A stretch of 64,000 bases of DNA from Macrostomum hystrix (GCA_950097015.1 CATNEN010000007.1:4836001-4900000), one strand, 5' to 3'. Shown: positions 3,089 to 37,900, numbered from the stretch's first letter. Notes: a model not told the origin generated them from the letters alone. Made by a program: numbers and translations.

Positions 3089-3370
3089 CATACATGCGCA
3101 ACACCCGGCCGACCCGGCCGAACCGGCCGGGTGAAACGAGGGCCAAGCAAGGTAAGTCGCAAAAACCAATCAACCAAGCGCAAAAAAAATCAAAGGGGGG
3201 ACCAAGGGACAAAAAAGGAAGGCGTGAAGAAAAGGAAAAAGGGGAGAGAAAAAGAGAGCAAATGAGAGCAAACTAAGTCGTAAATAGAGCAATGAAACGA
3301 ACTAAGTCGCAAATGAGAGCAAAAACTAAGTCGCACGGCCGGCTAAGATTTGGGAGGTTGCGCATGTATG
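3089..3370. mobile_element. Non-autonomous hAT-type DNA transposon (MITE), 282 bp
   Basis: Perfect 14-bp TIRs: catacatgcgcaac (3089-3102) and gttgcgcatgtatg (3357-3370). Exact 8-bp flanking direct repeat atactaaa (3081-3088 and 3371-3378). Subterminal repeats ccggccg and (c)taagtcgc. An 8-bp TSD is characteristic of hAT (also P) elements. Confidence 0.85.
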
Positions 3371-16900: not shown

Positions 16901-19900
16901 TGCACAGCTCAAAGTCCTGGGTGGCAAAGTTGGCAAGTTTAGAAGGGAATCTATGTAAAGTAGTAAAAATATGTAAAATATGAGTGTCTTTCGAAGTATT
17001 GTACCTGGAAGTCCCGTGCGCGGCACTGTTCACCTCCAAAGCGAGCAGGAGACGCCACAGTGCGATTGCGATAGCGGACACCAGTGCCACAGGTCGACGA
17101 ACACGAGCCCCACGGCTGCCACTGGCCCCACTGGCAATCGTTCGAGCAATTAGATTTGCTGCAACGAAGCGCACCGTTGCTGCAGCTGCACTGACCACAG
17201 GCAATCCTTATTGTCACACCAGACTCTAACATGTCACCTTCATTTATTTTTTCGACAACAGAAGACAGTCCAGGTGTGCCGTCAAGCTCAACCCACACAA
17301 CGCCAGTGTAGGACTCGGAAAGCTGCAGCTCCCTGGACACATCGCTCATGGACACTAAGCACTCGCAATCGCCACGAGCCAAGCACGCCGGCGGAGTAGC
17401 TAAAATTTATAATATTTTTGCACGATTAATACTGAAATACACAGACAAGAGCGTTGACAATTAACGCTGTTTACTAACTTGGCTCCAACATGAGACAGGT
17501 AGGAGTGACCGAAATTCCAGGAGTTGAAGTCAACACTGCCGAAGTCGCAGTAGTCGTCGTTGGTGGCGTCGTTGTCGACGTCGATGTCGAAGAACTGGTT
17601 GGTGGTGAAGTTGTTGAAGTCGATGTCGTAGTGGTAGTTGGTGGTGTTGTTGTCGACGTCGATGTCGAAGTGGTCGTTGGTGGTGTTGTTGTCGATGTCG
17701 ATGTCGAAGTAGTAGTTGGTGGTGTCGTTGTCGACGTCGATGTCGAAGTAGTAGTTGGTGGTGTTGTTGTCGACGTCGATGTCGAAGTGGTCGTTGGTGG
17801 TGTAGTTGTCGACGTCGATGTCGAAGTAGTAGTTGGTGGTGTTGTTGTCGACGTCGATGTCGAAGTGGTAGTTGTTGGTGGCGTAGTAGTAGACGTTGAT
17901 GTGGAGGTTGACGTTGTAGACGTCGACGTGGTTGTTGTCGGTGGTGTTGTTGTGGTGCTGCTGGTTGTTGTAGACAATCTTGTGTAGCAACCAAGCATGC
18001 TGACCTGAATCGAAACAGGCAGATTGTTTGTATTTCTGTAGCTGATCTTAATTCTGATTCGGTTTGTTCGAATTCCGAGACCACCGATTGACGCACACTC
18101 CACAAAGTTGGCCATGCACACAGAAAGCTCGTCTGGGGTGCTCGCCGACTTCACCAGAGTGAATGTCGAGGTGACGCCAGACGACTCGAACAGTTCGATT
18201 GATGAAATCAGACCCGGAGTGATAGTAATGATGCTGAGCTTTCCGATTGTCGATTGACTTCCATCGTCGCCACTGACATTGAAATCGAAGGTGATGCTCT
18301 CATCCTTGCGCGTTGAAGATGGCGCGCGGTTCACATCTAAGCCGGAAGCTGAAGATGGTCGCAGTAGGCTCAAGTCGGAGACGGGAATGAGACCGACACC
18401 TTGAGTGGAAGAGCTGATTGAAATGTCATTCAGGCCGATCGGACCATTGCTAGCCATGCCATCCTCTTCAAGACAACGAGTCACAGTATTTGTGGTCTTT
18501 GCCAGAATGACTTCAGTTGTTGTCTGAGGCTGTGTTGTAGTCGAAGTCGAAGTCGAAGTAGTGGTCGTAGGTGGTGTTGTTGTCGACGTCGATGTCGAAG
18601 TGGTCGTTGGTGTTGTTGTCGACGTCGATGTTGAAGTCGTTGTAGGAGGTGTTGTTGTCGACGTCGATGTAGACGTGGTGGTAGGTGGTGTTGTCGTTGA
18701 CGTCGATGTTGATGATGTGGTCGTTGTTGGGGGTGTTGTTGTCGATGTCGATGTAGACGTGGTGGTAGGTGGTGTTGTAGTCGACGTCGATGTGGTCGTA
18801 GGTGGTGTTGTTGTCGACGTCGATGTCGAAGTGGTCGTTGGTGTTGTTGTCGACGTCGATGTTGAAGTCGTTGTAGGAGGTGTTGTTGTCGACGTCGATG
18901 TAGACGTGGTGGTAGGTGGTGTCGTTGACGTCGATGTTGATGATGTGGTCGTTGTTGGGGGTGTTGTTGTCGATGTCGTTGAGGTTGAAGTGGTAGTAGT
19001 CGGTGGTGTTGTTGTTGATGATGTGGTCGTTGTTGGTGGTGTTGTAGTTAACGTTGTGGACGTTGTTGACGTCGTTGGTGGCGTCGTTGTTGTCGACGTT
19101 GATGTTGAAGTGGTGGTTGTTGGTGTTGTCGTTGACGTCGATGTTGATGTTGTGGTCGTTGTTGGGGGTGTTGTTGTCGATGTCGATGTAGACGTGGTGG
19201 TAGGTGGTGTTGTAGTCGACGTCGATGTGGTCGTTGGTGGTGTTGTTGTAGTTGACGTTGTGGACGTTGTTGACGTCGTTGGTGGCGTCGTTGTTGTCGA
19301 CGTTGATGTTGAAGTGGTGGTTGTTGGTGTTGTCGTTGACGTCGATGTTGATGTTGTGGTCGTTGTTGGGGGTGTCGTTGTCGATGTCGATGTAGACGTG
19401 GTGGAAGGTGGTGTTGTAGTCGACGTCGATGTGGTCGTTGGTGGTTTTGTTGTCGAGGTCGTTGAGGTTGAAGTAGTAGTAGTCGGTGGTGTTGTTGTTG
19501 ATGTTGTGGTCGTTGTAGGAGGTGTTGTTGTCGACGTCGATGTTGATGTGGTCGTTGTTGGTGGTGTTGTAGTTGACGTTGAGGAAGTTGTTGACGTCGT
19601 TGGTGGCGTCGTCGTTGTCGACGTTGATGTCGTAGTGGTAGTTGGTGGTGTTGTTGTCGACGTCGATGTTGATGTTGTGGTCGTTGTTGGAGGTGTTGTT
19701 GTCGACGTCGATGTTGATGTTGTCGTTGTTGGTGGTGTTGTAGTTGACGTTGTGGACGTTGATGACGTCGTTGGTGGCGTCGTCGTTGTCGACGTTGATG
19801 TCGTAGTGGTAGTTGGTGGTGTTGTTGTCGACGTCGATGTCGAAGTGGTTGTTGTTGGTTGTGTTGTTGTCGTTGTTGACGTACTTGTTGTTGTCGATCT

Positions 19901-22900
19901 TTGCTTGAAGCAGCCGTAGATACCTATCTGGATGTCGACGCTGTTGTTGTCAGTGACGGATGTGTAGTAGATCTCGAAACGTAGCATTTTTGAAACAATG
20001 GACAGGGTGCTCAGGCAGCTCATTAGATCGAGCTTGCAATTTGTGAGGTTGCTTCCGGTGAAATAGTAAGTGTCCCAGTTTAGCTGCGCCAGATTCGGTT
20101 TGTTGTAGACGCGAACAGCTTTAATATCGGAGGTAGAAAATCGTAGCTCAATTCGTCCGATTTCGATTCCTGTACTGCTTTCAGCAGCTGGGTTGACCTC
20201 AATCAGAATATTCTCATTGGGACTGCTAAGCGACTTTGAGTTCGGAATGTTTAAGTTGAATGGAACTGGCGATGACAGACGCAGCTTTTGCAGGTCGCTT
20301 TGTGTGTAGCCAGTTTGTGTTGAACTGATTATCTGGATTTCTGTTGGAGTAACAATATCCGGATTGGAAAGGCCTTCCAGCTCAACGCAAGCCCGACGCG
20401 CAGTAGTTGTGGTCGGCAGAGTTGTTGTAGACGAAGTTGAAGTCGAAGTGGTCGTTGGTGGCGTTGAGGTCGACGTCGATGTCGAAGTGGTCGTTGGTGG
20501 TGTTGTTGTCGACGTCGATGTCGAAGTGGTCGTTGGTGGTGTTGTTGTCGATGTCGATGTCGAAGTAGTAGTTGGTGGTGTCGTTGTCGACGTCGATGTC
20601 GAAGTAGTAGTTGGTGGTGTCGTTGTCGACGTCGATGTCGAAGTGGTCGTTGGTGGTGTAGTTGTCGACGTCGATGTCGAAGTAGTAGTTGGTGGTGTTG
20701 TTGTCGACGTCGATGTCGAAGTGGTAGTTGTTGGTGGCGTAGTAGTAGACGTTGATGTGGAGGTTGACGTTGTAGACGTCGACGTGGTTGTTGTCGGTGG
20801 TGTTGTTGTGGTGCTGCTGGTTGTTGTAGACAATCTTGTGTAGCAACCAAGCATGCTGACCTGAATCGAAACAGGCAGATTGTTTGTATTTCTGTAGCTG
20901 ATCTTAATTCTGATTCGGTTTGTTCGAATTCCGAGACCACCGATTGACGCACACTCCACAAAGTTGGCCATGCACACAGAAAGCTCGTCTGGGGTGCTCG
21001 CCGACTTCACCAGAGTGAATGTCGAGGTGACGCCAGACGACTCGAACAGTTCGATTGATGAAATCAGACCCGGAGTGATAGTAATGATGCTGAGCTTTCC
21101 GATTGTCGATTGACTTCCATCGTCGCCACTGACATTGAAATCGAAGGTGATGCTCTCATCCTTGCGCGTTGAAGATGGCGCGCGGTTCACATCTAAGCCG
21201 GAAGCTGAAGATGGTCGCAGTAGGCTCAAGTCGGAGACGGGAATGAGACCGACACCTTGAGTGGAAGAGCTGATTGAAATGTCATTCAGGCCGATCGGAC
21301 CATTGCTAGCCATGCCATCCTCTTCAAGACAACGAGTCACAGTATTTGTGGTCTTTGCCAGAATGACTTCAGTTGTTGTCTGAGGCTGTGTTGTAGTCGA
21401 AGTCGAAGTCGAAGTAGTGGTCGTAGGTGGTGTTGTTGTCGACGTCGATGTCGAAGTGGTCGTTGGTGTTGTTGTCGACGTCGATGTTGAAGTCGTTGTA
21501 GGAGGTGTTGTTGTCGACGTCGATGTAGACGTGGTGGTAGGTGGTGTTGTCGTTGACGTCGATGTTGATGATGTGGTCGTTGTTGGGGGTGTTGTTGTCG
21601 ATGTCGATGTAGACGTGGTGGTAGGTGGTGTTGTAGTCGACGTCGATGTGGTCGTAGGTGGTGTTGTTGTCGACGTCGATGTCGAAGTGGTCGTTGGTGT
21701 TGTTGTCGACGTCGATGTTGAAGTCGTTGTAGGAGGTGTTGTTGTCGACGTCGATGTAGACGTGGTGGTAGGTGGTGTCGTTGACGTCGATGTTGATGAT
21801 GTGGTCGTTGTTGGGGGTGTTGTTGTCGATGTCGTTGAGGTTGAAGTGGTAGTAGTCGGTGGTGTTGTTGTTGATGATGTGGTCGTTGTTGGTGGTGTTG
21901 TAGTTAACGTTGTGGACGTTGTTGACGTCGTTGGTGGCGTCGTTGTTGTCGACGTTGATGTTGAAGTGGTGGTTGTTGGTGTTGTCGTTGACGTCGATGT
22001 TGATGTTGTGGTCGTTGTTGGGGGTGTTGTTGTCGATGTCGATGTAGACGTGGTGGTAGGTGGTGTTGTAGTCGACGTCGATGTGGTCGTTGGTGGTGTT
22101 GTTGTAGTTGACGTTGTGGACGTTGTTGACGTCGTTGGTGGCGTCGTTGTTGTCGACGTTGATGTTGAAGTGGTGGTTGTTGGTGTTGTCGTTGACGTCG
22201 ATGTTGATGTTGTGGTCGTTGTTGGGGGTGTCGTTGTCGATGTCGATGTAGACGTGGTGGAAGGTGGTGTTGTAGTCGACGTCGATGTGGTCGTTGGTGG
22301 TTTTGTTGTCGAGGTCGTTGAGGTTGAAGTAGTAGTAGTCGGTGGTGTTGTTGTTGATGTTGTGGTCGTTGTAGGAGGTGTTGTTGTCGACGTCGATGTT
22401 GATGTGGTCGTTGTTGGTGGTGTTGTAGTTGACGTTGAGGAAGTTGTTGACGTCGTTGGTGGCGTCGTCGTTGTCGACGTTGATGTCGTAGTGGTAGTTG
22501 GTGGTGTTGTTGTCGACGTCGATGTTGATGTTGTGGTCGTTGTTGGAGGTGTTGTTGTCGACGTCGATGTTGATGTTGTCGTTGTTGGTGGTGTTGTAGT
22601 TGACGTTGTGGACGTTGATGACGTCGTTGGTGGCGTCGTCGTTGTCGACGTTGATGTCGTAGTGGTAGTTGGTGGTGTTGTTGTCGACGTCGATGTCGAA
22701 GTGGTTGTTGTTGGTTGTGTTGTTGTCGTTGTTGACGTACTTGTTGTTGTCGATCTTTGCTTGAAGCAGCCGTAGATACCTATCTGGATGTCGACGCTGT
22801 TGTTGTCAGTGACGGATGTGTAGTAGATCTCGAAACGTAGCATTTTTGAAACAATGGACAGGGTGCTCAGGCAGCTCATTAGATCGAGCTTGCAATTTGT

Positions 22901-25900
22901 GAGGTTGCTTCCGGTGAAATAGTAAGTGTCCCAGTTTAGCTGCGCCAGATTCGGTTTGTTGTAGACGCGAACAGCTTTAATATCGGAGGTAGAAAATCGT
23001 AGCTCAATTCGTCCGATTTCGATTCCTGTACTGCTTTCAGCAGCTGGGTTGACCTCAATCAGAATATTCTCATTGGGACTGCTAAGCGACTTTGAGTTCG
23101 GAATGTTTAAGTTGAATGGAACTGGCGATGACAGACGCAGCTTTTGCAGGTCGCTTTGTGTGTAGCCAGTTTGTGTTGAACTGATTATCTGGATTTCTGT
23201 TGGAGTAACAATATCCGGATTGGAAAGGCCTTCCAGCTCAACGCAAGCCCGACGCGCAGTAGTTGTGGTCGGCAGAGTTGTTGTAGACGAAGTTGAAGTC
23301 GAAGTGGTCGTTGGTGGCGTTGAGGTCGACGTCGATGTCGAAGTGGTCGTTGGTGGTGTTGTTGTCGACGTCGATGTCGAAGTGGTCGTTGGTGGTGTTG
23401 TTGTCGATGTCGATGTCGAAGTAGTAGTTGGTGGTGTCGTTGTCGACGTCGATGTCGAAGTAGTAGTTGGTGGTGTCGTTGTCGACGTCGATGTCGAAGT
23501 GGTCGTTGGTGGTGTAGTTGTCGACGTCGATGTCGAAGTAGTAGTTGGTGGTGTTGTTGTCGACGTCGATGTCGAAGTGGTAGTTGTTGGTGGCGTAGTA
23601 GTAGACGTTGATGTGGAGGTTGACGTTGTAGACGTCGACGTGGTTGTTGTCGGTGGTGTTGTTGTGGTGCTGCTGGTTGTTGTAGACAATCTTGTGTAGC
23701 AACCAAGCATGCTGACCTGAATCGAAACAGGCAGATTGTTTGTATTTCTGTAGCTGATCTTAATTCTGATTCGGTTTGTTCGAATTCCGAGACCACCGAT
23801 TGACGCACACTCCACAAAGTTGGCCATGCACACAGAAAGCTCGTCTGGGGTGCTCGCCGACTTCACCAGAGTGAATGTCGAGGTGACGCCAGACGACTCG
23901 AACAGTTCGATTGATGAAATCAGACCCGGAGTGATAGTAATGATGCTGAGCTTTCCGATTGTCGATTGACTTCCATCGTCGCCACTGACATTGAAATCGA
24001 AGGTGATGCTCTCATCCTTGCGCGTTGAAGATGGCGCGCGGTTCACATCTAAGCCGGAAGCTGAAGATGGTCGCAGTAGGCTCAAGTCGGAGACGGGAAT
24101 GAGACCGACACCTTGAGTGGAAGAGCTGATTGAAATGTCATTCAGGCCGATCGGACCATTGCTAGCCATGCCATCCTCTTTAAGACAACGAGTCACAGTA
24201 TTTGTGGTCTTTGCCAGAATGACTTCAGTTGTTGTCTGAGGCTGTGTTGTAGTCGAAGTCGAAGTCGAAGTAGTGGTCGTAGGTGGTGTTGTTGTCGACG
24301 TCGATGTCGAAGTGGTCGTTGGTGTTGTTGTCGACGTCGATGTTGAAGTCGTTGTAGGAGGTGTTGTTGTCGACGTCGATGTAGAAGTGGTGGTAGGTGG
24401 TGTTGTCGTTGACGTCGATGTTGATGATGTGGTCGTTGTTGGGGGTGTTGTTGTCGATGTCGATGTAGACGTGGTGGTAGGTGGTGTTGTAGTCGACGTC
24501 GATGTGGTCGTTGGTGGTGTTGTTGTCGATGTCGTTGAGGTTGAAGTGGTAGTAGTCGGTGGTATTGTTGTTGATGATGTGGTCGTTGTTGGTGGTGTTG
24601 TAGTTGACGTTGTGGACGTTGTTGACGTCGTTGGTGGCGTCGTTGTTGTCGACGTTGATGTAGTAGTGGTAGTTGGTGGTGTTGTTGTCGACGTCGATGT
24701 CGATGTTGTGGTCGTTGTTGGTGGTGTTGTAGTTGACGTTGTGGACGTTGTTGACGTCGTTGGTGGCGTCGTTGTTGTCGACGTTGATGTAGTAGTGGTA
24801 GTTGGTGGTGTTGTTGTCGACGTCGATGTTGATGTTGTCGTTGTTGGTGGTGTTGTAGTTGATGTTGTGGAAGTTGATGGAGACATTGTTGTCGACGTCG
24901 ACGTCGAAGTTGTTGTGCTTGGTGGTGTTGTACTTGTATTTGACTCTGTGGTTTGTCGGCTGAAGCATCCAAAAATTGAGAACTTAAGTTTTAGATTAAG
25001 ATCCTTAAGATTCTGGAATTCAATGAACACCGAAAACGACACTGCTGAGAGGCCGCGCCCACTAATCGATGAACAGGCGATCATATTTTCTAAACATTGA
25101 AGCGTCTCAGCAGAACTGCTGGTCCTCTTAATTAGGATTAATTCCGCAGATGAATCAGCCTTTGCAAATAACTGAAGTGATGTAATTAGAACTGGAACAT
25201 TAGCAATGATTCGCAGAATACCTACTATTGAAGGGGACCCGTCTGTTGTGGAGACATCAAAATTAAACTGAATGTGCTCCGACTTTGGAGTAGCCGATGG
25301 AACTTTATTAACAACCAAGCCAGGCGAATTGGGGCGTAGTAGGTTGATATCGCTCTCAACAAACAATGCGCTTTCCGAAAAATTAGAAATGCTAACGTCC
25401 TTTGAAGAAATTATGCTTGAATCCGACATAAAATCTGTTTCATCACATCGGATAGATGTAGTTGTGGAAGTCATTGGCGTCGTCAAAGTGGTCGTGGTCG
25501 TTAGTGGTGTTGTCGTTGACGTCGATGTCGAAGAAGTAGTTGTTTGCGTTGCACTCGACGTCGAAATGGAAGTGGTCGTTGGTAGTGTAGTTGTAGAAGT
25601 CGATGTCGAAGTGGCTGTCGTTGACGGCGTTGAAGCCGACGTCGTTGAAGTTGATGTCGATGTTAACGTTGTAGACGTCGACGTAGTAGTGGTCGGCGAA
25701 GTTGTTGTAGACGTTGTAGTCGTTGTAGGAGGTGTTGTTGTCGACGTCGATGTAGAAGTGGTTGTTGTTGGTTGTGTTGTTGTCGACGTCGATGTTGATG
25801 TTGTCGTTGTTGGTGGTGTTGTAGTTGACGTTGTGGACGTTGCTGACGTCGTTGGTGGCGTCGTTGTTGTCGACGTCGATGTAGACGTGGTGGTAGGTGG

Positions 25901-28900
25901 TGTTGTTGTCGACGTCGATGTCGAAGTGGTCGTTGGTGTTGTTGTCGACGTCGATGTTGAAGTCGTTGTAGGAGGTGTTGTTGTCGACGTCGATGTAGAA
26001 GTGGTGGTAGGTGGTGTTGTCGTTGACGTCGATGTTGATGATGTGGTCGTTGTTGGGGGTGTTGTTGTCGATGTCGATGTAGACGTGGTGGTAGGTGGTG
26101 TTGTAGTCGACGTCGATGTGGTCGTTGGTGGTGTTGTTGTCGATGTCGTTGAGGTTGAAGTGGTAGTAGTCGGTGGTGTTGTTGTTGATGATGTGGTCGT
26201 TGTTGGTGGTGTTGTAGTTGACGTTGTGGACGTTGTTGACGTTGTTGGTGGCGTCGTCGTTGTCGACGTTGATGTTGTAGTGGTAGTTGGTGGTGTTGTT
26301 GTCGACGTCGATGTTGATGTTGTGGTCGTTGTTGGGGGTGTTGTTGTCGATGTCGATGTAGACGTGGTGGTAGGTGGTGTTGTAGTCGACGTCGATGTGG
26401 TCGTTGGTGGTGTTGTTGTCGAGGTCGTTGAGGTTGAAGTGGTAGTAGTCGGTGGTGTTGATGTTGATGTTGTGGTCGTTGTAGGAGGTGTTGTTGTCGA
26501 CGTCGATGTTGATGTTGTCGTTGTTGGTGGTGTTGTAGTTGACGTTGTGGACGTTGTTGACGTCGTTGGTGGCGTCGGCGTTGTCGACGTTGATGTCGTA
26601 GTGGTAGTTGGTGGTGTTGTTGTCGACGTCGATGTTGATGTTGTGGTCGTTGTTGGAGGTGTTGTTGTCGACGTCGATGTTGATGTTGTCGTTGTTGGTG
26701 GTGTTGTAGTTGACGTTGTGGACGTTGATGACGTCGTTGGTGGCGTCGTCGTTGTCGACGTTGATGTCGTAGTGGTAGTTGGTGGTGTTGTTGTCGACGT
26801 CGATGTCGAAGTGGTTGTTGTTGGTTGTGTTGTTGTCGTTGTTGACGTACTTGTTGTTGTCGATCTTTGCTTGAAGCAGCCGTAGATACCTATCTGGATG
26901 TCGACGCTGTTGTTGTCAGTGACGGATGTGTAGTAGATCTCGAAACGTAGCATTTTTGAAACAATGGACAGGGTGCTCAGGCAGCTCATTAGATCGAGCT
27001 TGCAATTTGTGAGGTTGCTTCCGGTGAAATAGTAAGTGTCCCAGTTTAGCTGCGCCAGATTCGGTTTGTTGTAGACGCGAACAGCTTTAATATCGGAGGT
27101 AGAAAATCGTAGCTCAATTCGTCCGATTTCGATTCCTGTACTGCTTTCAGCAGCTGGGTTGACTTCAATCAGAATATTCTCATTGGGACTGCTAAGCGAC
27201 TTTGAGTTCGGAATGTTTAAGTTGAATGGAACTGGCGATGACAGACGCAGCTTTTGCAGGTCGCTTTGTGTGTAGCCAGTTTGTGTTGAACTGATTATCT
27301 GGATTTCTGTTGGAGTAACAATATCCGGATTGGAAAGGCCTTCCAGCTCAACGCAAGCCCGACGCGCAGTAGTTGTGGTCGGCAGAGTTGTTGTAGACGA
27401 AGTTGAAGTCGAAGTGGTCGTTGGTGGCGTTGAGGTCGACGTCGATGTCGAAGTGGTCGTTGGTGGTGTTGTTGTCGACGTCGATGTCGAAGTGGTCGTT
27501 GGTGGTGTTGTTGTCGATGTCGATGTCGAAGTAGTAGTTGGTGGTGTCGTTGTCGACGTCGATGTCGAAGTAGTAGTTGGTGGTGTTGTTGTCGACGTCG
27601 ATGTCGAAGTGGTAGTTGTTGGTGGCGTAGTAGTAGACGTTGATGTGGAGGTTGACGTTGTAGACGTCGACGTGGTTGTTGTCGGTGGTGTTGTTGTGGT
27701 GCTGCTGGTTGTTGTAGACAATCTTGTGTAGCAACCAAGCATGCTGACCTGAATCGAAACAGGCAGATTGTTTGTATTTCTGTAGCTGATCTTAATTCTG
27801 ATTCGGTTTGTTCGAATTCCGAGACCACCGATTGACGCACACTCCACAAAGTTGGCCATGCACACAGAAAGCTCGTCTGGGGTGCTCGCCGACTTCACCA
27901 GAGTGAATGTCGAGGTGACGCCAGACGACTCGAACAGTTCGATTGATGAAATCAGACCCGGAGTGATAGTAATGATGCTGAGCTTTCCGATTGTCGATTG
28001 ACTTCCATCGTCGCCACTGACATTGAAATCGAAGGTGATGCTCTCATCCTTGCGCGTTGAAGATGGCGCGCGGTTCACATCTAAGCCGGAAGCTGAAGAT
28101 GGTCGCAGTAGGCTCAAGTCGGAGACGGGAATGAGACCGACACCTTGAGTGGAAGAGCTGATTGAAATGTCATTCAGGCCGATCGGACCATTGCTAGCCA
28201 TGCCATCCTCTTCAAGACAACGAGTCACAGTATTTGTGGTCTTTGCCAGAATGACTTCAGTTGTTGTCTGAGGCTGTGTTGTAGTCGAAGTCGAAGTCGA
28301 AGTAGTGGTCGTAGGTGGTGTTGTTGTCGACGTCGATGTCGAAGTGGTCGTTGGTGTTGTTGTCGACGTCGATGTTGAAGTCGTTGTAGGAGGTGTTGTT
28401 GTCGACGTCGATGTAGACGTGGTGGTAGGTGGTGTTGTCGTTGACGTCGATGTTGATGATGTGGTCGTTGTTGGGGGTGTTGTTGTCGATGTCGATGTAG
28501 ACGTGGTGGTAGGTGGTGTTGTAGTCGACGTCGATGTGGTCGTTGGTGGTGTTGTTGTCGATGTCGTTGAGGTTGAAGTGGTAGTAGTCGGTGGTGTTGT
28601 TGTTGATGATGTGGTCGTTGTTGGTGGTGTTGTAGTTGACGTTGTGGACGTTGTTGACGTCGTTGGTGGCGTCGTTGTTGTCGACGTCGATGTAGACGTG
28701 GTGGTAGGTGGTGTTGTCGTTGACGTCGATGTTGATGATGTGGTCGTTGTTGGGGGTGTTGTTGTCGATGTCGATGTAGACGTGGTGGTAGGTGGTGTTG
28801 TAGTCGACGTCGATGTGGTCGTTGGTGGTGTTGTTGTCGATGTCGTTGAGGTTGAAGTGGTAGTAGTCGGTGGTGTTGTTGTTGATGATGTGGTCGTTGT

Positions 28901-31900
28901 TGGTGGTGTTGTAGTTGACGTTGTGGACGTTGTTGACGTTTTTGGTGGCGTCGTCGTTGTCGACGTTGATGTTGTAGTGGTAGTTGGTGGTGTTGTTGTC
29001 GACGTCGATGTTGATGTTGTGGTCGTTGTTGGGGGTGTTGTTGTCGATGTCGATGTAGACGTGGTGGTAGGTGGTGTTGTAGTCGACGTCGATGTGGTCG
29101 TTGGTGGTGTTGTTGTCGAGGTCGTTGAGGTTGAAGTGGTAGTAGTCGGTGGTGTTGATGTTGATGTTGTGGTCGTTGTAGGAGGTGTTGTTGTCGACGT
29201 CGATGTTGATGTTGTCGTTGTTGGTGGTGTTGTAGTTGACGTTGTGGACGTTGTTGACGTCGTTGGTGGCGTCGGCGTTGTCGACGTTGATGTCGTAGTG
29301 GTAGTTGGTGGTGTTGTTGTCGACGTCGATGTTGATGTTGTGGTCGTTGTTGGAGGTGTTGTTGTCGACGTCGATGTTGATGTTGTCGTTGTTGGTGGTG
29401 TTGTAGTTGACGTTGTGGACGTTGATGACGTCGTTGGTGGCGTCGTCGTTGTCGACGTTGATGTCGTAGTGGTAGTTGGTGGTGTTGTTGTCGACGTCGA
29501 TGTCGAAGTGGTTGTTGTTGGTTGTGTTGTTGTCGTTGTTGACGTACTTGTTGTTGTCGATCTTTGCTTGAAGCAGCCGTAGATACCTATCTGGATGTCG
29601 ACGCTGTTGTTGTCAGTGACGGATGTGTAGTAGATCTCGAAACGTAGCATTTTTGAAACAATGGACAGGGTGCTCAGGCAGCTCATTAGATCGAGCTTGC
29701 AATTTGTGAGGTTGCTTCCGGTGAAATAGTAAGTGTCCCAGTTTAGCTGCGCCAGATTCGGTTTGTTGTAGACGCGAACAGCTTTAATATCGGAGGTAGA
29801 AAATCGTAGCTCAATTCGTCCGATTTCGATTCCTGTACTGCTTTCAGCAGCTGGGTTGACTTCAATCAGAATATTCTCATTGGGACTGCTAAGCGACTTT
29901 GAGTTCGGAATGTTTAAGTTGAATGGAACTGGCGATGACAGACGCAGCTTTTGCAGGTCGCTTTGTGTGTAGCCAGTTTGTGTTGAACTGATTATCTGGA
30001 TTTCTGTTGGAGTAACAATATCCGGATTGGAAAGGCCTTCCAGCTCAACGCAAGCCCGACGCGCAGTAGTTGTGGTCGGCAGAGTTGTTGTAGACGAAGT
30101 TGAAGTCGAAGTGGTCGTTGGTGGCGTTGAGGTCGACGTCGATGTCGAAGTGGTCGTTGGTGATGTTGTTGTCGACGTCGATGTCGAAGTGGTCGTTGGT
30201 GGTGTTGTTGTCGATGTCGATGTCGAAGTAGTAGTTGGTGGTGTCGTTGTCGACGTCGATGTCGAAGTAGTAGTTGATGGTGTTGTTGTCGACGTCGATG
30301 TCGAAGTGGTAGTTGTTGGTGGCGTAGTAGTAGACGTTGATGTGGAGGTTGACGTTGTAGACGTCGACGTGGTTGTTGTCGGTGGTGTTGTTGTGGTGCT
30401 GCTGGTTGTTGTAGACAATCTTGTGTAGCAACCAAGCATGCTGACCTGAATCGAAACAGGCAGATTGTTTGTATTTCTGTAGCTGATCTTAATTCTGATT
30501 CGGTTTGTTCGAATTCCGAGACCACCGATTGACGCACACTCCACAAAGTTGGCCATGCACACAGAAAGCTCGTCTGGGGTGCTCGCCGACTTCACCAGAG
30601 TGAATGTCGAGGTGACGCCAGACGACTCGAACAGTTCGATTGATGAAATCAGACCCGGAGTGATAGTAATGATGCTGAGCTTTCCGATTGTCGATTGACT
30701 TCCATCGTCGCCACTGACATTGAAATCGAAGGTGATGCTCTCATCCTTGCGCGTTGAAGATGGCGCGCGGTTCACATCTAAGCCGGAAGCTGAAGATGGT
30801 CGCAGTAGGCTCAAGTCGGAGACGGGAATGAGACCGACACCTTGAGTGGAAGAGCTGATTGAAATGTCATTCAGGCCGATCGGACCATTGCTAGCCATGC
30901 CATCCTCTTCAAGACAACGAGTCACAGTATTTGTGGTCTTTGCCAGAATGACTTCAGTTGTTGTCTGAGGCTGTGTTGTAGTCGAAGTCGAAGTCGAAGT
31001 AGTGGTCGTAGGTGGTGTTGTTGTCGACGTCGATGTCGAAGTGGTCGTTGGTGTTGTTGTCGACGTCGATGTTGAAGTCGTTGTAGGAGGTGTTGTTGTC
31101 GACGTCGATGTAGACGTGGTGGTAGGTGGTGTTGTCGTTGACGTCGATGTTGATGATGTGGTCGTTGTTGGGGGTGTTGTTGTCGATGTCGATGTAGACG
31201 TGGTGGTAGGTGGTGTTGTAGTCGACGTCGATGTGGTCGTTGGTGGTGTTGTTGTCGATGTCGTTGAGGTTGAAGTGGTAGTAGTCGGTGGTGTTGTTGT
31301 TGATGATGTGGTCGTTGTTGGTGGTGTTGTAGTTGACGTTGTGGACGTTGTTGACGTCGTTGGTGGCGTCGTTGTTGTCGACGTCGATGTAGACGTGGTG
31401 GTAGGTGGTGTTGTCGTTGACGTCGATGTTGATGATGTGGTCGTTGTTGGGGGTGTTGTTGTCGATGTCGATGTAGACGTGGTGGTAGGTGGTGTTGTAG
31501 TCGACGTCGATGTGGTCGTTGGTGGTGTTGTTGTCGAGGTCGTTGAGGTTGAAGTGGTAGTAGTCGGTGGTGTTGATGTTGATGTTGTGGTCGTTGTAGG
31601 AGGTGTTGTTGTCGACGTCGATGTTGATGTTGTCGTTGTTGGTGGTGTTGTAGTTGACGTTGTGGACGTTGTTGACGTCGTTGGTGGCGTCGTCGTTGTC
31701 GACGTTGATGTCGTAGTGGTAGTTGGTGGTGTTGTTGTCGACGTCGATGTTGATGTTGTGGTCGTTGTTGGAGGTGTTGTTGTCGACGTCGATGTTGATG
31801 TTGTCGTTGTTGGTGGTGTTGTAGTTGACGTTGTGGACGTTGATGACGTCGTTGGTGGCGTCGTCGTTGTCGACGTTGATGTCGTAGTGGTAGTTGGTGG

Positions 31901-34900
31901 TGTTGTTGTCGACGTCGATGTCGAAGTGGTTGTTGTTGGTTGTGTTGTTGTCGTTGTTGACGTACTTGTTGTTGTCGATCTTTGCTTGAAGCAGCCGTAG
32001 ATACCTATCTGGATGTCGACGCTGTTGTTGTCAGTGACGGATGTGTAGTAGATCTCGAAACGTAGCATTTTTGAAACAATGGACAGGGTGCTCAGGCAGC
32101 TCATTAGATCGAGCTTGCAATTTGTGAGGTTGCTTCCGGTGAAATAGTAAGTGTCCCAGTTTAGCTGCGCCAGATTCGGTTTGTTGTAGACGCGAACAGC
32201 TTTAATATCGGAGGTAGAAAATCGTAGCTCAATTCGTCCGATTTCGATTCCTGTACTGCTTTCAGCAGCTGGGTTGACCTCAATCAGAATATTCTCATTG
32301 GGACTGCTAAGCGACTTTGAGTTCGGAATGTTTAAGTTGAATGGAACTGGCGATGACAGACGCAGCTTTTGCAGGTCGCTTTGTGTGTAGCCAGTTTGTG
32401 TTGAACTGATTATCTGGATTTCTGTTGGAGTAACAATATCCGGATTGGAAAGGCCTTCCAGCTCAACGCAAGCCCGACGCGCAGTAGTTGTGGTCGGCAG
32501 AGTTGTTGTAGACGAAGTTGAAGTCGAAGTGGTCGTTGGTGGCGTTGAGGTCGACGTCGATGTTGAAGTTGTCGTTGAGGCGATCGTCGTTGATGGAGTA
32601 GTAGTTGATGTCGATGTCGAAGTTGTGGTTGTCGATGTTTTTGTTGTCCTTTGTTGGTAGCATCCGAGCATCTTGATTTTTATATGCTGAGGCATTATAT
32701 TTACAAATGTAATTTTTATTGATATTTTTGTTGCTCGAAGCCCAGACCCTGGAATCTTCGCACATTCAATCATATCGTTGAAGCAAGCGTTAATTTCTGA
32801 AGCCTCAGTTGCATTGACAATGAGATCTTCCGGTGACAAATTGTTGTAGTTTGCTCTTAGCTCTACTCCTCGGAGCAAAGATTTAGGTCCAACCTGAGCA
32901 ATTATTAGCGACCCTATTGTTGATGCACTCCCATCGTCTCCAGCCACAAAGAAATCGAATTGTACAGACTCTGTTGTTGGTGTATTGGAGTTTCCTGTGA
33001 TTTTAAAACCGACTCCCGCCGTGCTAAATCGTAGTAAATCTATGCTTCGATTCGAATAGGAGCTAACGCCAAGAGATGCAGCCCGCAGATTGATTTCATC
33101 GGAACTGATTATGTTTGAGTCAGCCATGCCGTCCTTGTCAATGCAGCGTGGTGCCGGCGTTTCAGTTTTTGCCTTGACAGCTTCTGTTGTCGAGTAGGCT
33201 GTTGTTGGTGGAAGAGTTGTCAGGAGCTTTTGAAAGCAGCCGTGAACGGAGAGTTTCACTGAAATAGTTGTTTCTTGGTTGAAGTTAAAAGTCAAGCGGA
33301 CTTCCTGCGCTGTCAGCGGGGTGGAGTTCTCTGGCAAAGCGCAGCGCAGCAAGTCAGGGAAGCAGCGACGCTCTGAAGTTGTCAAGTTTGCTAGCCTTGT
33401 GTAGTCCGTATCACTGAACCTCTTGTACTCAACAATTATAGATGTAGTTGGTATGAAAAAGTCCGTGGAAATCAAGGTGAGCTTCGTCAGCCTGGAGTTA
33501 ATTGGAGTGTTCTGTGTCAGTGAAATAGTTATAGTGGCACTTGCTCCAGTCGTGTTGAGAACAAAGCTCTCAGGGTACTCAGGTCTCAGTAGAGACTTGG
33601 GTTTCTTAGCAGACGAGGTCGGCTCGATTCTGATGTCCTCATCGCGAATGACCGTATTGGAGGCCATTCCATCCTGCTCGTCCGGTTCGCAAACCCTAGG
33701 GATGCTTGCGGTTGTTGTTGTTGTAGTCGTTGTTGCTGAAATCAAAGGTGAAAATTAGGAACGGAGTTGGTTTCGAAGTATTTGAATCACTTTTTTTTTA
33801 TTAAACAGCTTTATGACTTTTTAGAGAGTGACTTAATTGTGCCATTCTACAAGAAATGCAAACTAATGAAAGCAGCAAGACGAATTTTTCGGAAATTGAA
33901 CTCATTTTAACTATTTACATCGAATTCACATTTAACGAAACAATGATTCGAAAGTGAAATTTATAAATCGAGCAAAACAATATCTTATTGGCTAAGTTGT
34001 ACACTGAGATCTCACACAGTTACGATCAGATCAGATGTAATAGATTGGCTAACATGTAATTTCCACGTGATTTGAAGCTAAATCTTTGAATGGGTCAAAT
34101 CAAGGCATATGCCAGAGAGATGGTTCGCTGGAATGGGGCCATGCAAGTCTGCCCGTGAAACGATTCTACGAAATTCCCAGTAGCATCTTCCAAACACACA
34201 ATGTCTGCACAAAGCGTGCAACTCACTAAGACAGCTAGGAGACTCGTCCTCTCCGTTCCTGCATTCGACAATGCCGTCGCAACGGTGAGCGCAGATACTC
34301 ACTCCTGCGCTATTTAAGCACCGCACATTGTCCCCAGTGCAGGGGGTCGTTACAGTAGTGGCCGATGTCGTCGTTGGAGTTGTTGTCGTTATTGAGCTGG
34401 TCGTTGTCGTCGTTGGAACTGGAGTTGTAGAGAAAGTCGTGATTTCAGACGTCGTCGGAGAGGTTGTAGATGGCGTCGATGAAGTTGTCGGTGGTGTTGT
34501 TGTGGTGCTGCTGGTTGTTGTAGACAATCTTGTGTAGCAACCAAGCATGCTGACCTGAATCGAAACAGGCAGATTGTTTGTATTTCTGTAGCTGATCTTA
34601 ATTCTGATTCGGTTTGTTCGAATTCCGAGACCACCGATTGACGCACACTCCACAAAGTTGGCCATGCACACAGAAAGCTCGTCTGGGGTGCTCGCCGACT
34701 TCACCAGAGTGAATGTCGAGGTGACGCCAGACGACTCGAACAGTTCGATTGATGAAATCAGACCCGGAGTGATAGTAATGATGCTGAGCTTTCCGATTGT
34801 CGATTGACTTCCATCGTCGCCACTGACATTGAAATCGAAGGTGATGCTCTCATCCTTGCGCGTTGAAGATGGCGCGCGGTTCACATCTAAGCCGGAAGCT

Positions 34901-37900
34901 GAAGATGGTCGCAGTAGGCTCAAGTCGGAGACGGGAATGAGACCGACACCTTGAGTGGAAGAGCTGATTGAAATGTCATTCAGGCCGATCGGACCATTGC
35001 TAGCCATGCCATCCTCTTCAAGACAACGAGTCACAGTATTTGTGGTCTTTGCCAGAATGACTTCAGTTGTTGTCTGAGGCTGTGTTGTAGTCGAAGTCGA
35101 AGTCGAAGTAGTGGTCGTAGGTGGTGTTGTTGTCGACGTCGATGTCGAAGTGGTCGTTGGTGTTGTTGTCGACGTCGATGTTGAAGTCGTTGTAGGCGGT
35201 GTTGTTGTCGACGTCGATGTAGAAGTGGTGGTTGTTGGTGTTGTCGTTGACGTCGATGATGATGTGGTCGTTGTTGGGGGTGTTGTTGTCGATGTCGATG
35301 TAGACGTGGTGGTAGGTGGTGTTGTAGTCGACGTCGATGTGGTCGTTGGTGGTGTTGTTGTCGAGGTTGTTGAGGTTGAAGTGGTAGTAGTCGGTGGTGT
35401 TGTTGTTGATGATGTTGTCGTTGTTGGTGGTGTTGTAGTTGACGTTGTGGACGTTGTTGACGTCGTTGGTGGCGTCGTTGTTGTCGACGTTGATGTAGTA
35501 GTGGTAGTTGGTGGTGTTGTTGTCGACGTCGATGTTGATGTTGTGGTCGTTGTTGGTGGTGTTGTAGTTGACGTTGTGGACGTTGTTGACGTCGTTGTTG
35601 GCGTCGTTGACGTAGACGTTGATGTAGTAGTGGTAGTTAGTGGTGTTGTTGTCGACGTCGATGTTGATGTTGTGGTCGTTGTTGGTGGTGTTGTAGTTGA
35701 CGTTGTGGACGTTGTTGACGTCGTTGGTGGCGTCGTTGTTGTCGACGTTGATGTAGTAGTGGTAGTTGGTGGTGTCGTTGTCGACGTCGATGTCGATGTT
35801 GTGGTCGTTGTTGGGGGTGTTGTTGTCGATGTCGATGTAGACGTGGTGGAAGGTGGTGTTGTAGTCGACGTCGATGTGGTCGTTGGTTGTGTTGTTGTCG
35901 AGGTCGTTGAGGTTGAAGTGGTAGTCGTCGGTGGTGTTGTAGTCGACGTTGTGGATGTTGATGTTGTTGTAGGCGTTGTTGTTGTCGATGTTGTTGTGGT
36001 TGTTGTGGTTGTTGATGTTGTGCTACAAGACTGCTCATCTGTTCCATCCTAGGAATGTCATAAAAAGATTTGTTTTTTTTCGCTGTGAAATTCTTTTTAA
36101 TGCAAGGATCACCAGTGCTCTTATTTACTTACGCTGCAATCCGCTTTTCCATCACAAAGCTGGGTCACATTGATACATTTGCATTGGTCGCATATTAGTG
36201 TGTTGCGTTCCATACACAGGCATTCTGAAACGGGAATGGATCATAAATAGATAGACAAATTTTCTCAGTCAGAATTTTACTTGAAATTCTTTTGTTTGCT
36301 GCTGGCCTCTGATTGGATCAGCAACTTGGGTTGGTGCGAAATCCAATTAAGTTACTTACTGCAGCCTCTCTCGTCGCTGCCGTCGCCGCAGTCGTCGTGC
36401 CCGTCGCAATGGTTGGTTCGCGGGATGCACTTAGTCACGGTTGTGCCAGGTACGCCGCAGGTGAACTCCAAAACGGCGTCACACTCTAATTGGTTGGGTG
36501 AAAGAGAGATTAATTGATTGCTTGGTTATTTTTCTATTGATTGATTGATTCTGAGAGGCGCGCAGATGAACTTAATGAAAGTACTTTGCAGGGGTTCGGT
36601 GGCAGGTTAACGCGTTTGCCTCTGGCACCAATGTCCTTGAGGTCGATTCCGCGGCGATGCATTTATTTGGGGCGCAGCTGCTGAGAGAAGGCTTGTGGGC
36701 TTGTCGTACAATTTACGCCCTTGAGGGCTAACCCCCAAGGCACAGTAAAATTGTTCACTGCCTGACGTTAAGAAATTCAGGACAGATGTACACACCTGTG
36801 TGAGCGTGTGACTGCATACACAGAGTATCTGAGTGCGAGTGTGCTAAGGAGTCTAGGTGCGACTAAGTGCGAGTGCGCGAAATGGGCAGAATTGCCTCCT
36901 CGCTGGCTAGTGTCAACAAATAATGTGCTGGTGCTCACCGCCATCCTGTAGTTATTATTCTTATTAAGCACATCATGCACTGCAGTTCCAACTCTGAGGA
37001 ATAGCCTATCTTACTCTTGCAATTCTCCTCGTCTGTGGTGTCGGGTAGGCCGCAGTCGTAGACGCCATCGCATCGCTTCTGCTTCGGGAGGCACTTGCCG
37101 GTCTTGTTGCACTGGATCTCGGTCGGATTGCAACCTTTCCCGAATTCAGGTGAACTTTTTTCTTTAATTCAATTTAATTGCGCGTAAACCCCTTGCCAAT
37201 CCGAATCAACTAGCTGCAATTTCAAGCTTACTAACTCAATAATAAAAAATAATATTACTCTTCCATAAACAGTGAACCGAACTTCAACAAGCTTGTATGA
37301 TCAGATAGGCTCATAGAGCAATCACAATTCCTGCTAAATTCTAGCCTAGCAGTCTCCATACACAGTCTCGTCGCCTCACCGCATCCCATTTCGTCTGAGC
37401 CGTCCGTGCACTGAGGAATGCCGTCGCATTTCAGCGACATGGCGACGCACTGCTGGGTTGTGATGCAGCGGAAGAAAGATGGCGAGCAGGTCGTGTCTGC
37501 GGGTGGCGGACTTTATGTTTTACTCCTTGCCATCATCATTAATCAGCTTTTCCTGCAACTGCTAAGCCTTCCTGGGTTGTGGACTTATTAGTTATTTTGG
37601 TTTCAGATTGTTAGAACGAAACTCTATGTGCCAGACAATGGGCGGCGATGCTTTCCGGCAATATCCGATTGATGCACGCTGCGGCCATGCACCATACAAA
37701 TAACTCAACTATTACAAATCGGACAGGACACCTTACCGTTAGACAGGAACTGTTATATGAGACACCTAGCTGTTATATGAGACACCTAGCTGTTATATGA
37801 GACACCTAGCTGTTATATGAGACACCTAGCTGTTTATATGAGACACCTAGCTGTTATATCAGACACCTAGCTGTTATATGAGACACCTAGCTGTTATATG

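What the first reader, a model, noticed from the sequence alone, without database searches (positions are those of the whole stretch)
17987..35025. Repeated about 160-aa discoidin/FA58C-like module with a conserved C-x6-C insert: 14 copies, 5 subtypes
Seen: all five subtypes start with a C-rich cap (mostly C...(D/E)GM/L, F in subtype E) followed by ..I....I, and end with (I/L/V).(I/V/F)S/K/G(M/I/V).GC(Y/F). Each has an internal C-x6-C: CMANFVEC (A), CKLDLMSC (B), CFPDLLRC (C), CFNDMIEC (D), CLENMIAC (E). Subtype A has IRTNRIRI before the last strand. Established: FA58C domains begin C..PLGM.sG.I...qI.aSS and end ARYIRI...LRLELxGC with a terminal disulfide, and one FA58C followed by LDLa occurs in SCO-spondin, matching exon 22 here. 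The modules lack the usual Trp-rich FA58C motifs. Inference: a divergent, possibly unnamed discoidin-fold subfamily with an extra disulfide, expanded like the CysD domains of mucins and perhaps binding carbohydrate or surfaces.
Basis: partly seen in the sequence, partly recalled or inferred. Interest (0 to 1): 0.82.

Follow-up and report, generated by a model that had tools for sequence, protein, structure and literature searches.

The report
Divergent discoidin beads in flatworm mucin
A Macrostomum flatworm gene of the SCO-spondin/mucin type carries 14 copies of a roughly 160-residue, four-cysteine module that no family database recognises; it is predicted with high confidence to fold like a discoidin (factor V/VIII C-type) domain, so it is a strongly diverged version of a known adhesion/lectin fold, not a new kind of domain.

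Summary
On the minus strand, one stop-free 5,423-codon frame (17477-33745) and the exon upstream of it (34081-36048) encode 14 four-Cys modules of 153-164 aa (6 A, 5 B, and one each of C, D, E), set in Ser/Thr/Pro tracts that are 94.7% S/T/P. Only five sequences are distinct: A and B copies differ by 0-1 nt, and two 2,856-bp units are identical, so the copy number is unverified.

Pfam finds nothing for four subtypes at E<=10 (only a chance-level BACON match for C). A profile search of 1.84 billion proteins finds one Macrostomum lignano protein and one metagenome-derived animal contig. AlphaFold2 models of A and B are confident (pLDDT 89 and 87, pTM 0.86). Every top structural neighbour is a galactose-binding-domain-like jelly roll, and the terminal cysteines are in register with the FA58C disulfide.

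The host gene is SCO-spondin-like. Its closest outside relatives, rotifer SCO-spondins, carry weak FA58C modules with Ser/Thr/Pro linkers at the same position. The C-x6-C pair is present or absent as a pair, as expected for a local disulfide.

Verdict: a diverged, unnamed discoidin subfamily used as folded beads in a mucin domain. Ligand binding is inferred, not shown.

The parts
17477..33745 (-). Giant mucin exon: a 5,423-codon open frame with no stop, holding 13 modules (order C D B A B A B E A B A B A) between PTS tracts
   Evidence: Linkers total 3,320 aa at 94.7% Ser/Thr/Pro.
34081..36048 (-). Upstream exon open frame: LDLa tail, about 330 aa PTS, module A, PTS, LDLa-like repeat
34534..35025 (-). 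Module A, copy 1 (164 aa), lying between LDLa repeats at the place where SCO-spondins carry FA58C
34231..34344 (-). LDLa-like six-Cys repeat after module A
   Evidence: PF00057 at 18.9 bits, E 0.0017, profile positions 2-37 of 37, below the 24.1-bit cut-off
33233..33691 (-). Module C (153 aa)
   Evidence: 74% identical to the C-type module of P0001.
32657..33145 (-). Module D (163 aa)
31988..32470 (-). Module B, copy 1 (161 aa); sequence used for the second AF2 model
30425..30916 (-). Module A, copy 2; sequence used for the first AF2 model
29570..30052 (-). Module B, copy 2
27728..28219 (-). Module A, copy 3
26873..27355 (-). Module B, copy 3
24962..25447 (-). Module E (162 aa), the subtype closest to the L001 relatives
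   Evidence: Smith-Waterman z 14.7 against the L001 module.
23696..24187 (-). Module A, copy 4 (one nt and one aa difference from the other A copies)
22763..23245 (-). Module B, copy 4
20840..21331 (-). Module A, copy 5
19907..20389 (-). Module B, copy 5
17984..18475 (-). Module A, copy 6
38281..51265 (-). N-terminal scaffold exons: EGF-like, three VWD-C8-TIL units, LDLa
   Evidence: Pfam scans run exon by exon. 87-96% identical to M. lignano P0001.
13688..17382 (-). C-terminal scaffold exons: VWC-like, TSP1 repeats, TIL, Cys-rich end
   Evidence: Pfam scans run exon by exon

Best explanation
The modules are strongly diverged discoidin (F5/8 type C-like, galactose-binding-domain-like) jelly-roll domains. 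They most likely descend from the FA58C domain that SCO-spondin-type proteins carry next to their LDLa repeats. In this Macrostomum gene the domain was multiplied together with Ser/Thr/Pro-rich spacers. The protein is therefore predicted to be a secreted, end-linked polymer (three VWD-C8-TIL units at the N-terminus, TSP1/TIL and a Cys-rich C-terminus) whose long O-glycosylated centre is punctuated by 14 compact globular beads. Each bead would be closed by the canonical disulfide between its first and last Cys, and additionally stapled by a local C-x6-C disulfide across a short two-helix element. Shown here: the sequence anatomy, the absence of any family match, the near-absence of relatives, the predicted fold, the host-gene architecture and the rotifer intermediates. 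Inferred: the descent from FA58C, the two disulfides, and the function. For function I propose that the beads act as non-covalent binding or cross-linking nodes (for glycans, partner proteins or surfaces) within a mucus or adhesive polymer, by analogy with CysD domains of MUC2/MUC5, the six FA58C domains of sea-urchin Nectin, and the repeat core of the similarly built flatworm adhesive Mlig-ap2.
For: Fold: AF2 model of A has pLDDT 89.3 and pTM 0.86; model of B has 86.8 and 0.86, with all five models >=81.8 and the same order of strands and helices. Foldseek top hits are the CASPR2 discoidin domain, neuropilin b1/b2, factor VIII C2, DDR2 and lactadherin C2 (E from 1.6e-4, TM about 0.5). In the Foldseek-independent search all 50 listed rows are galactose-binding-domain-like or closely similar jelly rolls, Z up to 11.7 over 125-137 residues, for both A and B. 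Model residues 1 to 164 (A) or 1 to 161 (B) align with the Cys-to-Cys spans of neuropilin-1 b2 (430..584), DDR1 (30..186) and factor VIII C2 (2173..2327). ESM-atlas shape neighbours and language-model neighbours are mostly PF00754/PF22633 clusters. Descent: the scaffold is SCO-spondin-like, and its nearest non-Macrostomum relatives are rotifer proteins named SCO-spondin (37-39% identity over 99% of the VWD3-LDLa region). After their LDLa cluster these carry four Cys-bounded modules with Ser/Thr/Pro linkers. Two of them weakly match PF00754 (25.8 bits, E 1.3e-5; 17.4 bits, E 0.005) and two are invisible to Pfam. hhalign of the Macrostomum profile against the rotifer FA58C-like module is end to end (1-163 to 1-141, 24% identity, P 0.0048) and aligns the invariant Arg and the terminal GC. 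Module A lies between LDLa repeats. Disulfides: each module has four Cys. The internal pair is present in all Macrostomum modules covering the region and replaced together (Q and D) in all three L001 modules, while the terminal pair is kept. Mucin context: linkers are 94.7% S/T/P. Functional analogies: Mlig-ap2 architecture and its surface-binding role (PMC6410801, PMC8621496); Nectin and recurrent FA58C in temporary adhesives (PMC10057474); F5_F8 domains beside PTS in protostome mucin-like proteins (PMC4948705).
Against: No sequence method links the modules to FA58C at a conventional threshold. Pfam shows no PF00754 match at E<=10, the PDB profile search finds nothing, and the hhalign P values are marginal after four comparisons. 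Structural Z scores for FA58C, CBM32, DOC and IFT25 are tied within 1, so the fold places the module in the superfamily, not specifically in FA58C. The FA58C Trp-containing core motifs are missing. Both models rest on shallow alignments (5 and 9 sequences). No coordinates were available, so Cys-Cys distances and the position of the C-x6-C relative to the ligand-binding end could not be checked.
Confidence: 0.7

Rival explanations
1. The modules have the galactose-binding-domain-like jelly-roll fold but do not descend from the SCO-spondin FA58C. They would be another branch of that superfamily recruited independently into the mucin region, or the fold similarity would be convergent.
For: The best structural scores are tied between IFT25, CBM32 and eukaryotic discoidin domains (Z 11.7 to about 10). 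There is no significant sequence match to PF00754. hhalign probabilities are low.
Against: The terminal Cys pair is in register with the FA58C disulfide, a feature of extracellular eukaryotic discoidin domains. The module sits between LDLa repeats exactly where SCO-spondins have FA58C. Rotifer relatives of the same scaffold show a graded series, from Pfam-detectable FA58C to undetectable modules, in the same array. The cap motif, the invariant Arg and the last strand align end to end with the rotifer FA58C-like module.
Confidence: 0.15
2. The beads do not bind ligands. They are inert, disulfide-locked spacers that break up the PTS domain, setting stiffness, packing in secretory granules or protease resistance. 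Their rapid divergence would then reflect weak constraint.
For: The modules are the fastest-evolving folded part (74-76% identity to P0001, against 87-96% for the scaffold exons). The aromatic residues typical of FA58C binding loops are missing. Conservation is no higher in predicted strands than in loops. No free Cys is available for covalent cross-links.
Against: Five subtypes as low as 23% identical keep a confidently predicted fold and the same invariant residues, so there is constraint. Relatives of this fold in comparable proteins (Nectin, hemolectin-type mucins) are treated as binding modules in the literature (PMC10057474, PMC4948705). Fast evolution is equally expected for a binding surface.
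Confidence: 0.25
3. Part of the array is not real. The count of 14 is inflated, or deflated, by assembly of a near-perfect long tandem repeat, and the true gene has a different number of A and B modules.
For: A copies differ by 0-1 nt in 492 and B copies by 0-1 nt in 483. Two 2,856-bp units are 100% identical. The M. lignano gene model P0001 holds only one A-type and one C-type module.
Against: The other units differ in PTS length and sequence (85-93% identity with indels, A-to-A spacings of 2,697, 4,032 and 4,109 bp) and include a unique E module. That pattern is not what a simple collapse or duplication artefact gives. The frame stays open over 16.3 kb. Published Macrostomum adhesive genes do have dozens of near-identical repeats (PMC6410801).
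Confidence: 0.25
4. The AlphaFold models are over-confident artefacts of a shallow alignment, and the module has another fold.
For: Only 5 and 9 sequences were in the alignments. Two of the five models for A scored only about 68 pLDDT.
Against: Two targets only 25% identical gave the same topology with pTM 0.86. Three different structure libraries and a language-model search that uses no structure all point to the same superfamily. The sequence hallmarks at both termini fit that fold.
Confidence: 0.05

Closest known systems
F5/8 type C (FA58C, discoidin) domain, Pfam PF00754, clan galactose-binding-domain-like
   Same: About 150-160 aa. Predicted eight-stranded jelly roll. First and last Cys in register with the canonical terminal disulfide. 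N-terminal cap C-x(2-4)-(D/E)-G-(M/L) followed by I...DI.(I/V)SS. An invariant Arg, and a last strand ending in G-C.
   Different: No PF00754 match even at E<=10. Trp-containing core motifs are absent. There is an extra C-x6-C pair on a two-helix element between strands 5 and 6 of the model. Identity to solved discoidin domains is about 10-18%.
SCO-spondin (vertebrate SSPO and the rotifer proteins named SCO-spondin, P0008-P0014)
   Same: Three VWD-C8-TIL units, an LDLa cluster, a discoidin-type module next to LDLa, TSP1/TIL repeats and a Cys-rich C-terminus. The rotifer proteins already have four Cys-bounded modules with short Ser/Thr/Pro linkers.
   Different: Here the module is multiplied to 14 and separated by PTS tracts of up to 477 aa, so the protein is as much a gel-forming mucin as a spondin. 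Only a handful of TSP1 repeats are seen in the window. A CTCK domain was not confirmed by Pfam.
CysD (Mucin2_WxxW) domains of MUC2, MUC5AC and MUC5B
   Same: Small disulfide-locked globular domains that interrupt the PTS region of a polymer-forming mucin (PMC4948705). The deployment is the same.
   Different: Unrelated fold and sequence: there is no WxxW, four rather than ten Cys, and no Pfam match.
[quoted passage not shown]
   Same: Same genus and the same plan: VWD/TIL/C8/LDLa at the N-terminal end, TIL/TSP1 at the C-terminal end, and a large repetitive, O-glycosylated centre (PMC6410801, PMC8621496).
   Different: Mlig-ap2 is described with two VWD domains and 46 tightly packed repeats of 255 and 221 aa. 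Here there are three VWD domains and 14 modules at irregular spacing. The repeat sequences are held only as figure images, so homology of the repeats could not be tested.
Sea-urchin Nectin and insect/lophotrochozoan hemolectin-type mucin-like proteins
   Same: Tandem FA58C domains in secreted adhesive or clotting polymers. F5_F8 domains lie next to small PTS regions in VWD-C8-TIL proteins (PMC10057474, PMC4948705).
   Different: Those domains are ordinary Pfam-detectable FA58C, and they are not spread through a multi-kilobase PTS domain.

Membership tests
F5/8 type C (PF00754) | Scores at or above the Pfam gathering threshold (28.2 bits) | tested here: not met
   hmmscan at E<=10 gave no PF00754 hit for any of A-E. 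The profile of all five against PDB sequences gave no discoidin hit.
F5/8 type C (PF00754) | Beta-sandwich jelly roll of the galactose-binding-domain-like superfamily, about 150 aa | tested here: met
   Tested on predicted models only. A: pLDDT 89.3; B: pLDDT 86.8. Z 10-11.7, rmsd about 3-3.7 A, 125-137 residues aligned to neuropilin b1/b2, DDR1/2, CASPR2, factor V/VIII C domains, discoidin I and CBM32.
F5/8 type C (PF00754) | Cys at the first and last positions of the domain, in register with the canonical terminal disulfide | tested here: met
   C1 and the terminal G-C are invariant in A-E. The model ends align with the Cys-to-Cys spans of neuropilin-1 b2, DDR1 and factor VIII C2. The residue numbers of those disulfides are from my own knowledge.
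F5/8 type C (PF00754) | The terminal disulfide is actually formed (geometry or chemistry) | not testable with these tools
   Model coordinates are not returned. It is inferred from the covariation pattern of the other Cys pair.
F5/8 type C (PF00754) | Conserved Trp-containing core motifs (PROSITE FA58C_1-type signature, recalled from memory) | tested here: not met
   There is no Trp in A, C, D or E and one in B. The last strand keeps only x-G-C.
F5/8 type C (PF00754) | Detectable remote sequence homology to bona fide FA58C | tested here: inconclusive
   hhalign against the rotifer SCO-spondin FA58C-like module gave P 0.0048 end to end and P 0.016 for the N-terminal 41 columns with the broader profile. 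That rotifer module is itself sub-threshold for PF00754.
F5/8 type C (PF00754) | Ligand binding through loops ('spikes') at one end of the sandwich | not testable with these tools
   No coordinates and no binding data.
SCO-spondin (host gene) | [quoted passage not shown] | tested here: met
   Pfam scans run exon by exon. P0001 maps to these exons at 87-96% identity.
SCO-spondin (host gene) | TSP1 repeats interspersed with TIL in the C-terminal part | tested here: met
   PF00090/PF19028 and PF01826 were found in exons 15085-17382. There are fewer repeats than in vertebrate SCO-spondin (the vertebrate number is from memory).
SCO-spondin (host gene) | C-terminal cystine knot | tested here: inconclusive
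   The last Cys-rich exon (13688-14293) gave only a TIL match.
SCO-spondin (host gene) | Closest relatives are SCO-spondins | tested here: met
   The best non-Macrostomum hits are rotifer proteins that their sources name SCO-spondin, at 37-39% identity and 99% coverage.
Gel-forming mucin | Long PTS domain in one large exon | tested here: met
   3,320 linker residues at 94.7% S/T/P within a 16.3-kb open frame. O-glycosylation itself was not tested.
Gel-forming mucin | CysD (Mucin2_WxxW) domains inside the PTS | tested here: not met
   No Pfam hit and no WxxW motif.
Mlig-ap2 adhesive protein | Two VWD domains and 21 x 255-aa plus 25 x 221-aa central repeats | tested here: not met
   The window has three VWD units and 14 irregularly spaced modules, against the description in PMC6410801. 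Homology of the repeat sequences could not be tested.

The most novel reading that the evidence does not exclude
The module defines an unnamed, lineage-restricted discoidin subfamily that is the working (surface-, glycan- or partner-binding) unit of a Macrostomum family of SCO-spondin-derived polymers. That family would include the adhesive Mlig-ap2, whose 'enigmatic' 255- and 221-aa repeats would then be the same kind of discoidin bead plus Thr-rich spacer. This would give the flatworm temporary-adhesion field a defined, foldable domain to express and test.
Probability: 0.2. Interest if true: 0.7.

Novelty: new variant of a known kind. Interest (0 to 1): 0.45.

Why it matters
The result shows how far a discoidin domain can drift and still keep its fold: no Pfam hit, and two hits among 1.84 billion protein representatives. 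It documents a route by which a single FA58C domain of a SCO-spondin-type protein was turned into the bead of a beads-on-a-string mucin, a role that an unrelated domain (CysD) fills in vertebrate mucins. It also gives the module a testable identity. Flatworm adhesive proteins with the same overall plan have large repeat cores whose function the field calls enigmatic. If those repeats are relatives of this module, a 160-residue recombinant domain becomes an obvious reagent for binding and adsorption studies. A profile built from these sequences would also improve annotation of spiralian mucin-like genes.

Tried and rejected
- Pfam on all five subtypes found nothing except a chance-level BACON match for C.
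- A profile search of PDB sequences gave only a chance hit, a DIS3L exonuclease at E 1.6.
- CysD, SEA and other mucin-associated domains were rejected: there is no Pfam hit and the predicted fold differs.
- Identity with Mlig-ap2 was rejected on the published architecture. Its repeat sequences exist only as figure images, and the module motifs do not occur in the held part of the mass-spectrometry tables, so relatedness of the repeats stays open.
- A plain HMM of the modules against the rotifer proteins was not significant (8 bits). hhalign against rotifer modules m1, m3 and m4 aligned only the last strand.
Organism confirmation from reads, expression, the splice junction at 33745/34081 and repeat copy number were therefore not checked, and read laying was not used.
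- Notebook look-ups by place and by sequence returned nothing. Look-ups by word gave only unchecked first-reader titles.
- Exons were searched one by one by reference.
- Model coordinates are not exposed, so Cys-Cys distances and the location of the C-x6-C relative to the binding end were not measured.

Full report
**Observation.** The region is dominated by one minus-strand open frame of 5,423 codons with no stop (17477-33745). A pattern search for a Cys, a C-x6-C pair and a terminal G-C-[YF] finds 13 modules in it. A fourteenth lies in the next exon upstream.

The order along the gene is A | C D B A B A B E A B A B A. Each module has exactly four Cys. The five subtypes are 23-38% identical to A. 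Invariant positions are the first Cys, a Leu-Arg pair, a Ser, the C-x6-C pair and the terminal Gly-Cys. All ten pairwise Smith-Waterman scores beat all 200 shuffles (z 4.4-43), so the family is real.

- The 'C-rich cap' contains a single Cys.
- The six A copies differ by 0-1 nt in 492 and the five B copies by 0-1 nt in 483. Two B-PTS-A-PTS units (17984-20839 and 20840-23695) are identical over 2,856 bp. There are therefore five distinct sequences, and the A/B amplification is very recent, homogenised, or partly an assembly matter.
- The exon with the first A copy is longer than its first start codon suggests. Its open frame spans 34081-36048 and reads LDLa tail, about 330 aa PTS, module A, PTS, LDLa-like repeat.

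The linkers total 3,320 aa and are 94.7% Ser/Thr/Pro.

**Host gene and organism.** Exons were scanned one at a time by reference; I built no joined protein model.
- Upstream exons encode an EGF-like segment, three VWD-C8-TIL units and LDLa. Downstream exons encode VWC-like, TSP1 and TIL repeats and a Cys-rich end.
- The exhaustive profile search identified a Macrostomum lignano protein (P0001, UniRef A0A1I8GJ02) with the same scaffold followed by an A-type and a C-type module.
- The window's scaffold exons are 87-96% identical to P0001, but the modules only 74-76%. The window is therefore a close paralogue or sister-species orthologue, and the modules are its fastest-evolving folded part.
- The nearest relatives outside Macrostomum are rotifer proteins that their sources name SCO-spondin (37-39% identity over 99% of the VWD3-LDLa region).

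**What the module is.**
- Pfam gives no hit at E<=10 for A, B, D and E, and only a chance-level BACON match for C. A profile of the five subtypes finds nothing meaningful among PDB sequences.
- Against 1.84 billion representative proteins the profile finds only P0001 (E 9.7e-65) and a 189-aa protein from a metagenome assembly (P0002, E 5.3e-4).
- AlphaFold2 nevertheless folds module A with pLDDT 89.3 and pTM 0.86. Module B, only 25% identical, folds with pLDDT 86.8 and pTM 0.86 and the same succession of strands and two short helices.
- Foldseek against the PDB returns the discoidin domains of CASPR2, neuropilin-1/2, DDR2, factor VIII and lactadherin first.
- The Foldseek-independent search returns, for both models, 50 rows that are all galactose-binding-domain-like or closely similar jelly rolls: IFT25, CBM32, neuropilin b1/b2, DDR1/2, factor V/VIII C domains, discoidin I and APC10/DOC. 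Z reaches 11.7 over 125-137 residues.
- In the eukaryotic discoidin hits the model aligns from its first to its last residue with the Cys-to-Cys span. The first and last Cys of the module are therefore in register with the canonical FA58C disulfide.
- Atlas shape neighbours and language-model neighbours are again mostly PF00754/PF22633 clusters.

The fold assignment to this superfamily is well supported. The fold scores alone do not separate FA58C from CBM32, DOC or IFT25.

**Link to FA58C.**
- In rotifer SCO-spondin P0013 the LDLa cluster is followed by four Cys-bounded modules of 124-141 aa joined by Ser/Thr/Pro linkers.
- Scanned singly, two of them are weak PF00754 matches (25.8 bits, E 1.3e-5; 17.4 bits, E 0.005). 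The other two are invisible to Pfam. The same array thus shows a gradient from recognisable to unrecognisable discoidin domains.
- hhalign of the Macrostomum profile against the clearest rotifer FA58C-like module gives an end-to-end alignment (1-163 to 1-141, 24% identity, P 0.0048). It lines up the cap, the invariant Arg and the terminal Gly-Cys. With a broader profile only the N-terminal 41 columns align (P 0.016). These values are suggestive, not decisive.
- Position adds weight. The first module lies between LDLa repeats, and the repeat after it is a full-length but sub-threshold LDLa (18.9 bits). From established knowledge, that is where SCO-spondins carry FA58C.

**A second lineage and the extra disulfide.**
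- P0002 comes from a 7-kb contig (L001, GC 39%) that is evidently animal DNA. It has a reverse-transcriptase fragment, then at least four exon-like pieces in one frame, each a Ser/Thr/Pro linker plus a Cys-bounded module. A piece with PTS and an LDLa-like repeat follows, resembling the one after module A.
- These modules align end to end with the Macrostomum ones and are closest to subtype E (z 14.7).
- They keep the terminal Cys pair. At the C-x6-C positions they carry Gln and Asp, in a segment of the same length.
- The internal pair is therefore present or absent together, as expected if the two Cys bond to each other. That leaves the first and last Cys as the canonical pair.
- It also shows that the element is not an insert created with the disulfide. 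The disulfide was added to an existing two-helix segment (residues about 114-127 of A, modelled with block pLDDT of 93-95).

**Function (inferred).**
- Three VWD-C8-TIL units and a Cys-rich C-terminus are the hallmarks of end-linked secreted polymers. The PTS tracts predict dense O-glycosylation.
- The modules have an even number of Cys, a net acidic charge and one to three N-glycosylation sequons. I expect them to be closed globular beads, not covalent cross-linkers.
- By analogy with discoidin domains in general, I rate a binding or cross-linking role as most likely. The specific analogies are the six FA58C domains of the sea-urchin adhesive Nectin (PMC10057474), the F5_F8 domains beside PTS in protostome mucin-like proteins (PMC4948705), and CysD domains within vertebrate PTS regions. 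An inert-spacer role is the main rival.
- Macrostomum adhesive protein Mlig-ap2 has the same overall plan and a large repeat core thought to contact the substrate (PMC6410801, PMC8621496). Its described architecture differs (two VWD domains; 46 repeats of 255 or 221 aa), and its repeat sequences could not be compared.
- Unchecked first-reader notes from this scan mention other arrays of discoidin-like beads with Thr-rich spacers elsewhere in this genome. I treat these as leads only.

**Limits.**
Expression, splicing and repeat copy number were therefore not tested, and read laying was not used.
- Both structure predictions use shallow alignments.

**Verdict.** This is a strongly diverged, unnamed discoidin-type module with an added local disulfide, multiplied within the mucin domain of a SCO-spondin-like flatworm gene. 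It is a new variant of a known kind, of moderate interest. Its main potential value is as a defined domain for studying flatworm mucus and adhesive polymers.

Noticed in passing
window 17984-20839 and 20840-23695: Two B-PTS-A-PTS units are 100% identical over 2,856 bp, while the other units differ in PTS length and sequence. This could be a very recent duplication, homogenisation or an assembly artefact.
   Followed up: partly
L001 1-7020 (ENA ERZ25070786, ctg92785l): A contig from a 'metagenome' assembly that is evidently animal DNA. It has a reverse-transcriptase fragment (1269-2071) and then four or more exon-like pieces in one frame (2525-4993), each a Ser/Thr/Pro linker plus a module related to subtype E but lacking the internal Cys pair. 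A PTS plus LDLa-like piece follows (5315-5716). The organism is unknown.
   Followed up: partly
P0013 residues 1885-2562 (and orthologous parts of P0008-P0011, P0014): Rotifer SCO-spondins carry four different Cys-bounded modules of 124-141 aa with Ser/Thr/Pro linkers after the LDLa cluster. Only two weakly match PF00754. The other two are as invisible to Pfam as the Macrostomum modules.
   Followed up: partly
P0001 residues about 1373-1395, against window 33233-35025: The M. lignano gene model jumps from the middle of an A-type module to a C-type module and ends in out-of-frame-looking low-complexity sequence. It is probably a mis-spliced or truncated annotation of a repeat-rich gene.
   Followed up: no
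window 13688-51265, compared with P0001: The modules are 74-76% identical to the M. lignano protein, whereas the VWD/C8/TIL/LDLa exons are 87-96% identical. The beads evolve faster than the scaffold.
   Followed up: partly
window 52846-53962, 58055-58750, 59094-60161 and 47737-48495: Long simple-sequence or minisatellite arrays produce spurious ORFs: a CT-rich tract, two arrays with about 30-bp units, and an intronic array translating as SESH repeats.
   Followed up: no
window 269-730 (-), 7235-10587 (+), 60268-61896 (-): Neighbouring genes look like a dynamin-type GTPase, a WD-repeat dynein intermediate-chain-like gene and a zDHHC palmitoyltransferase. This was judged from the ORF translations only.
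   Followed up: no
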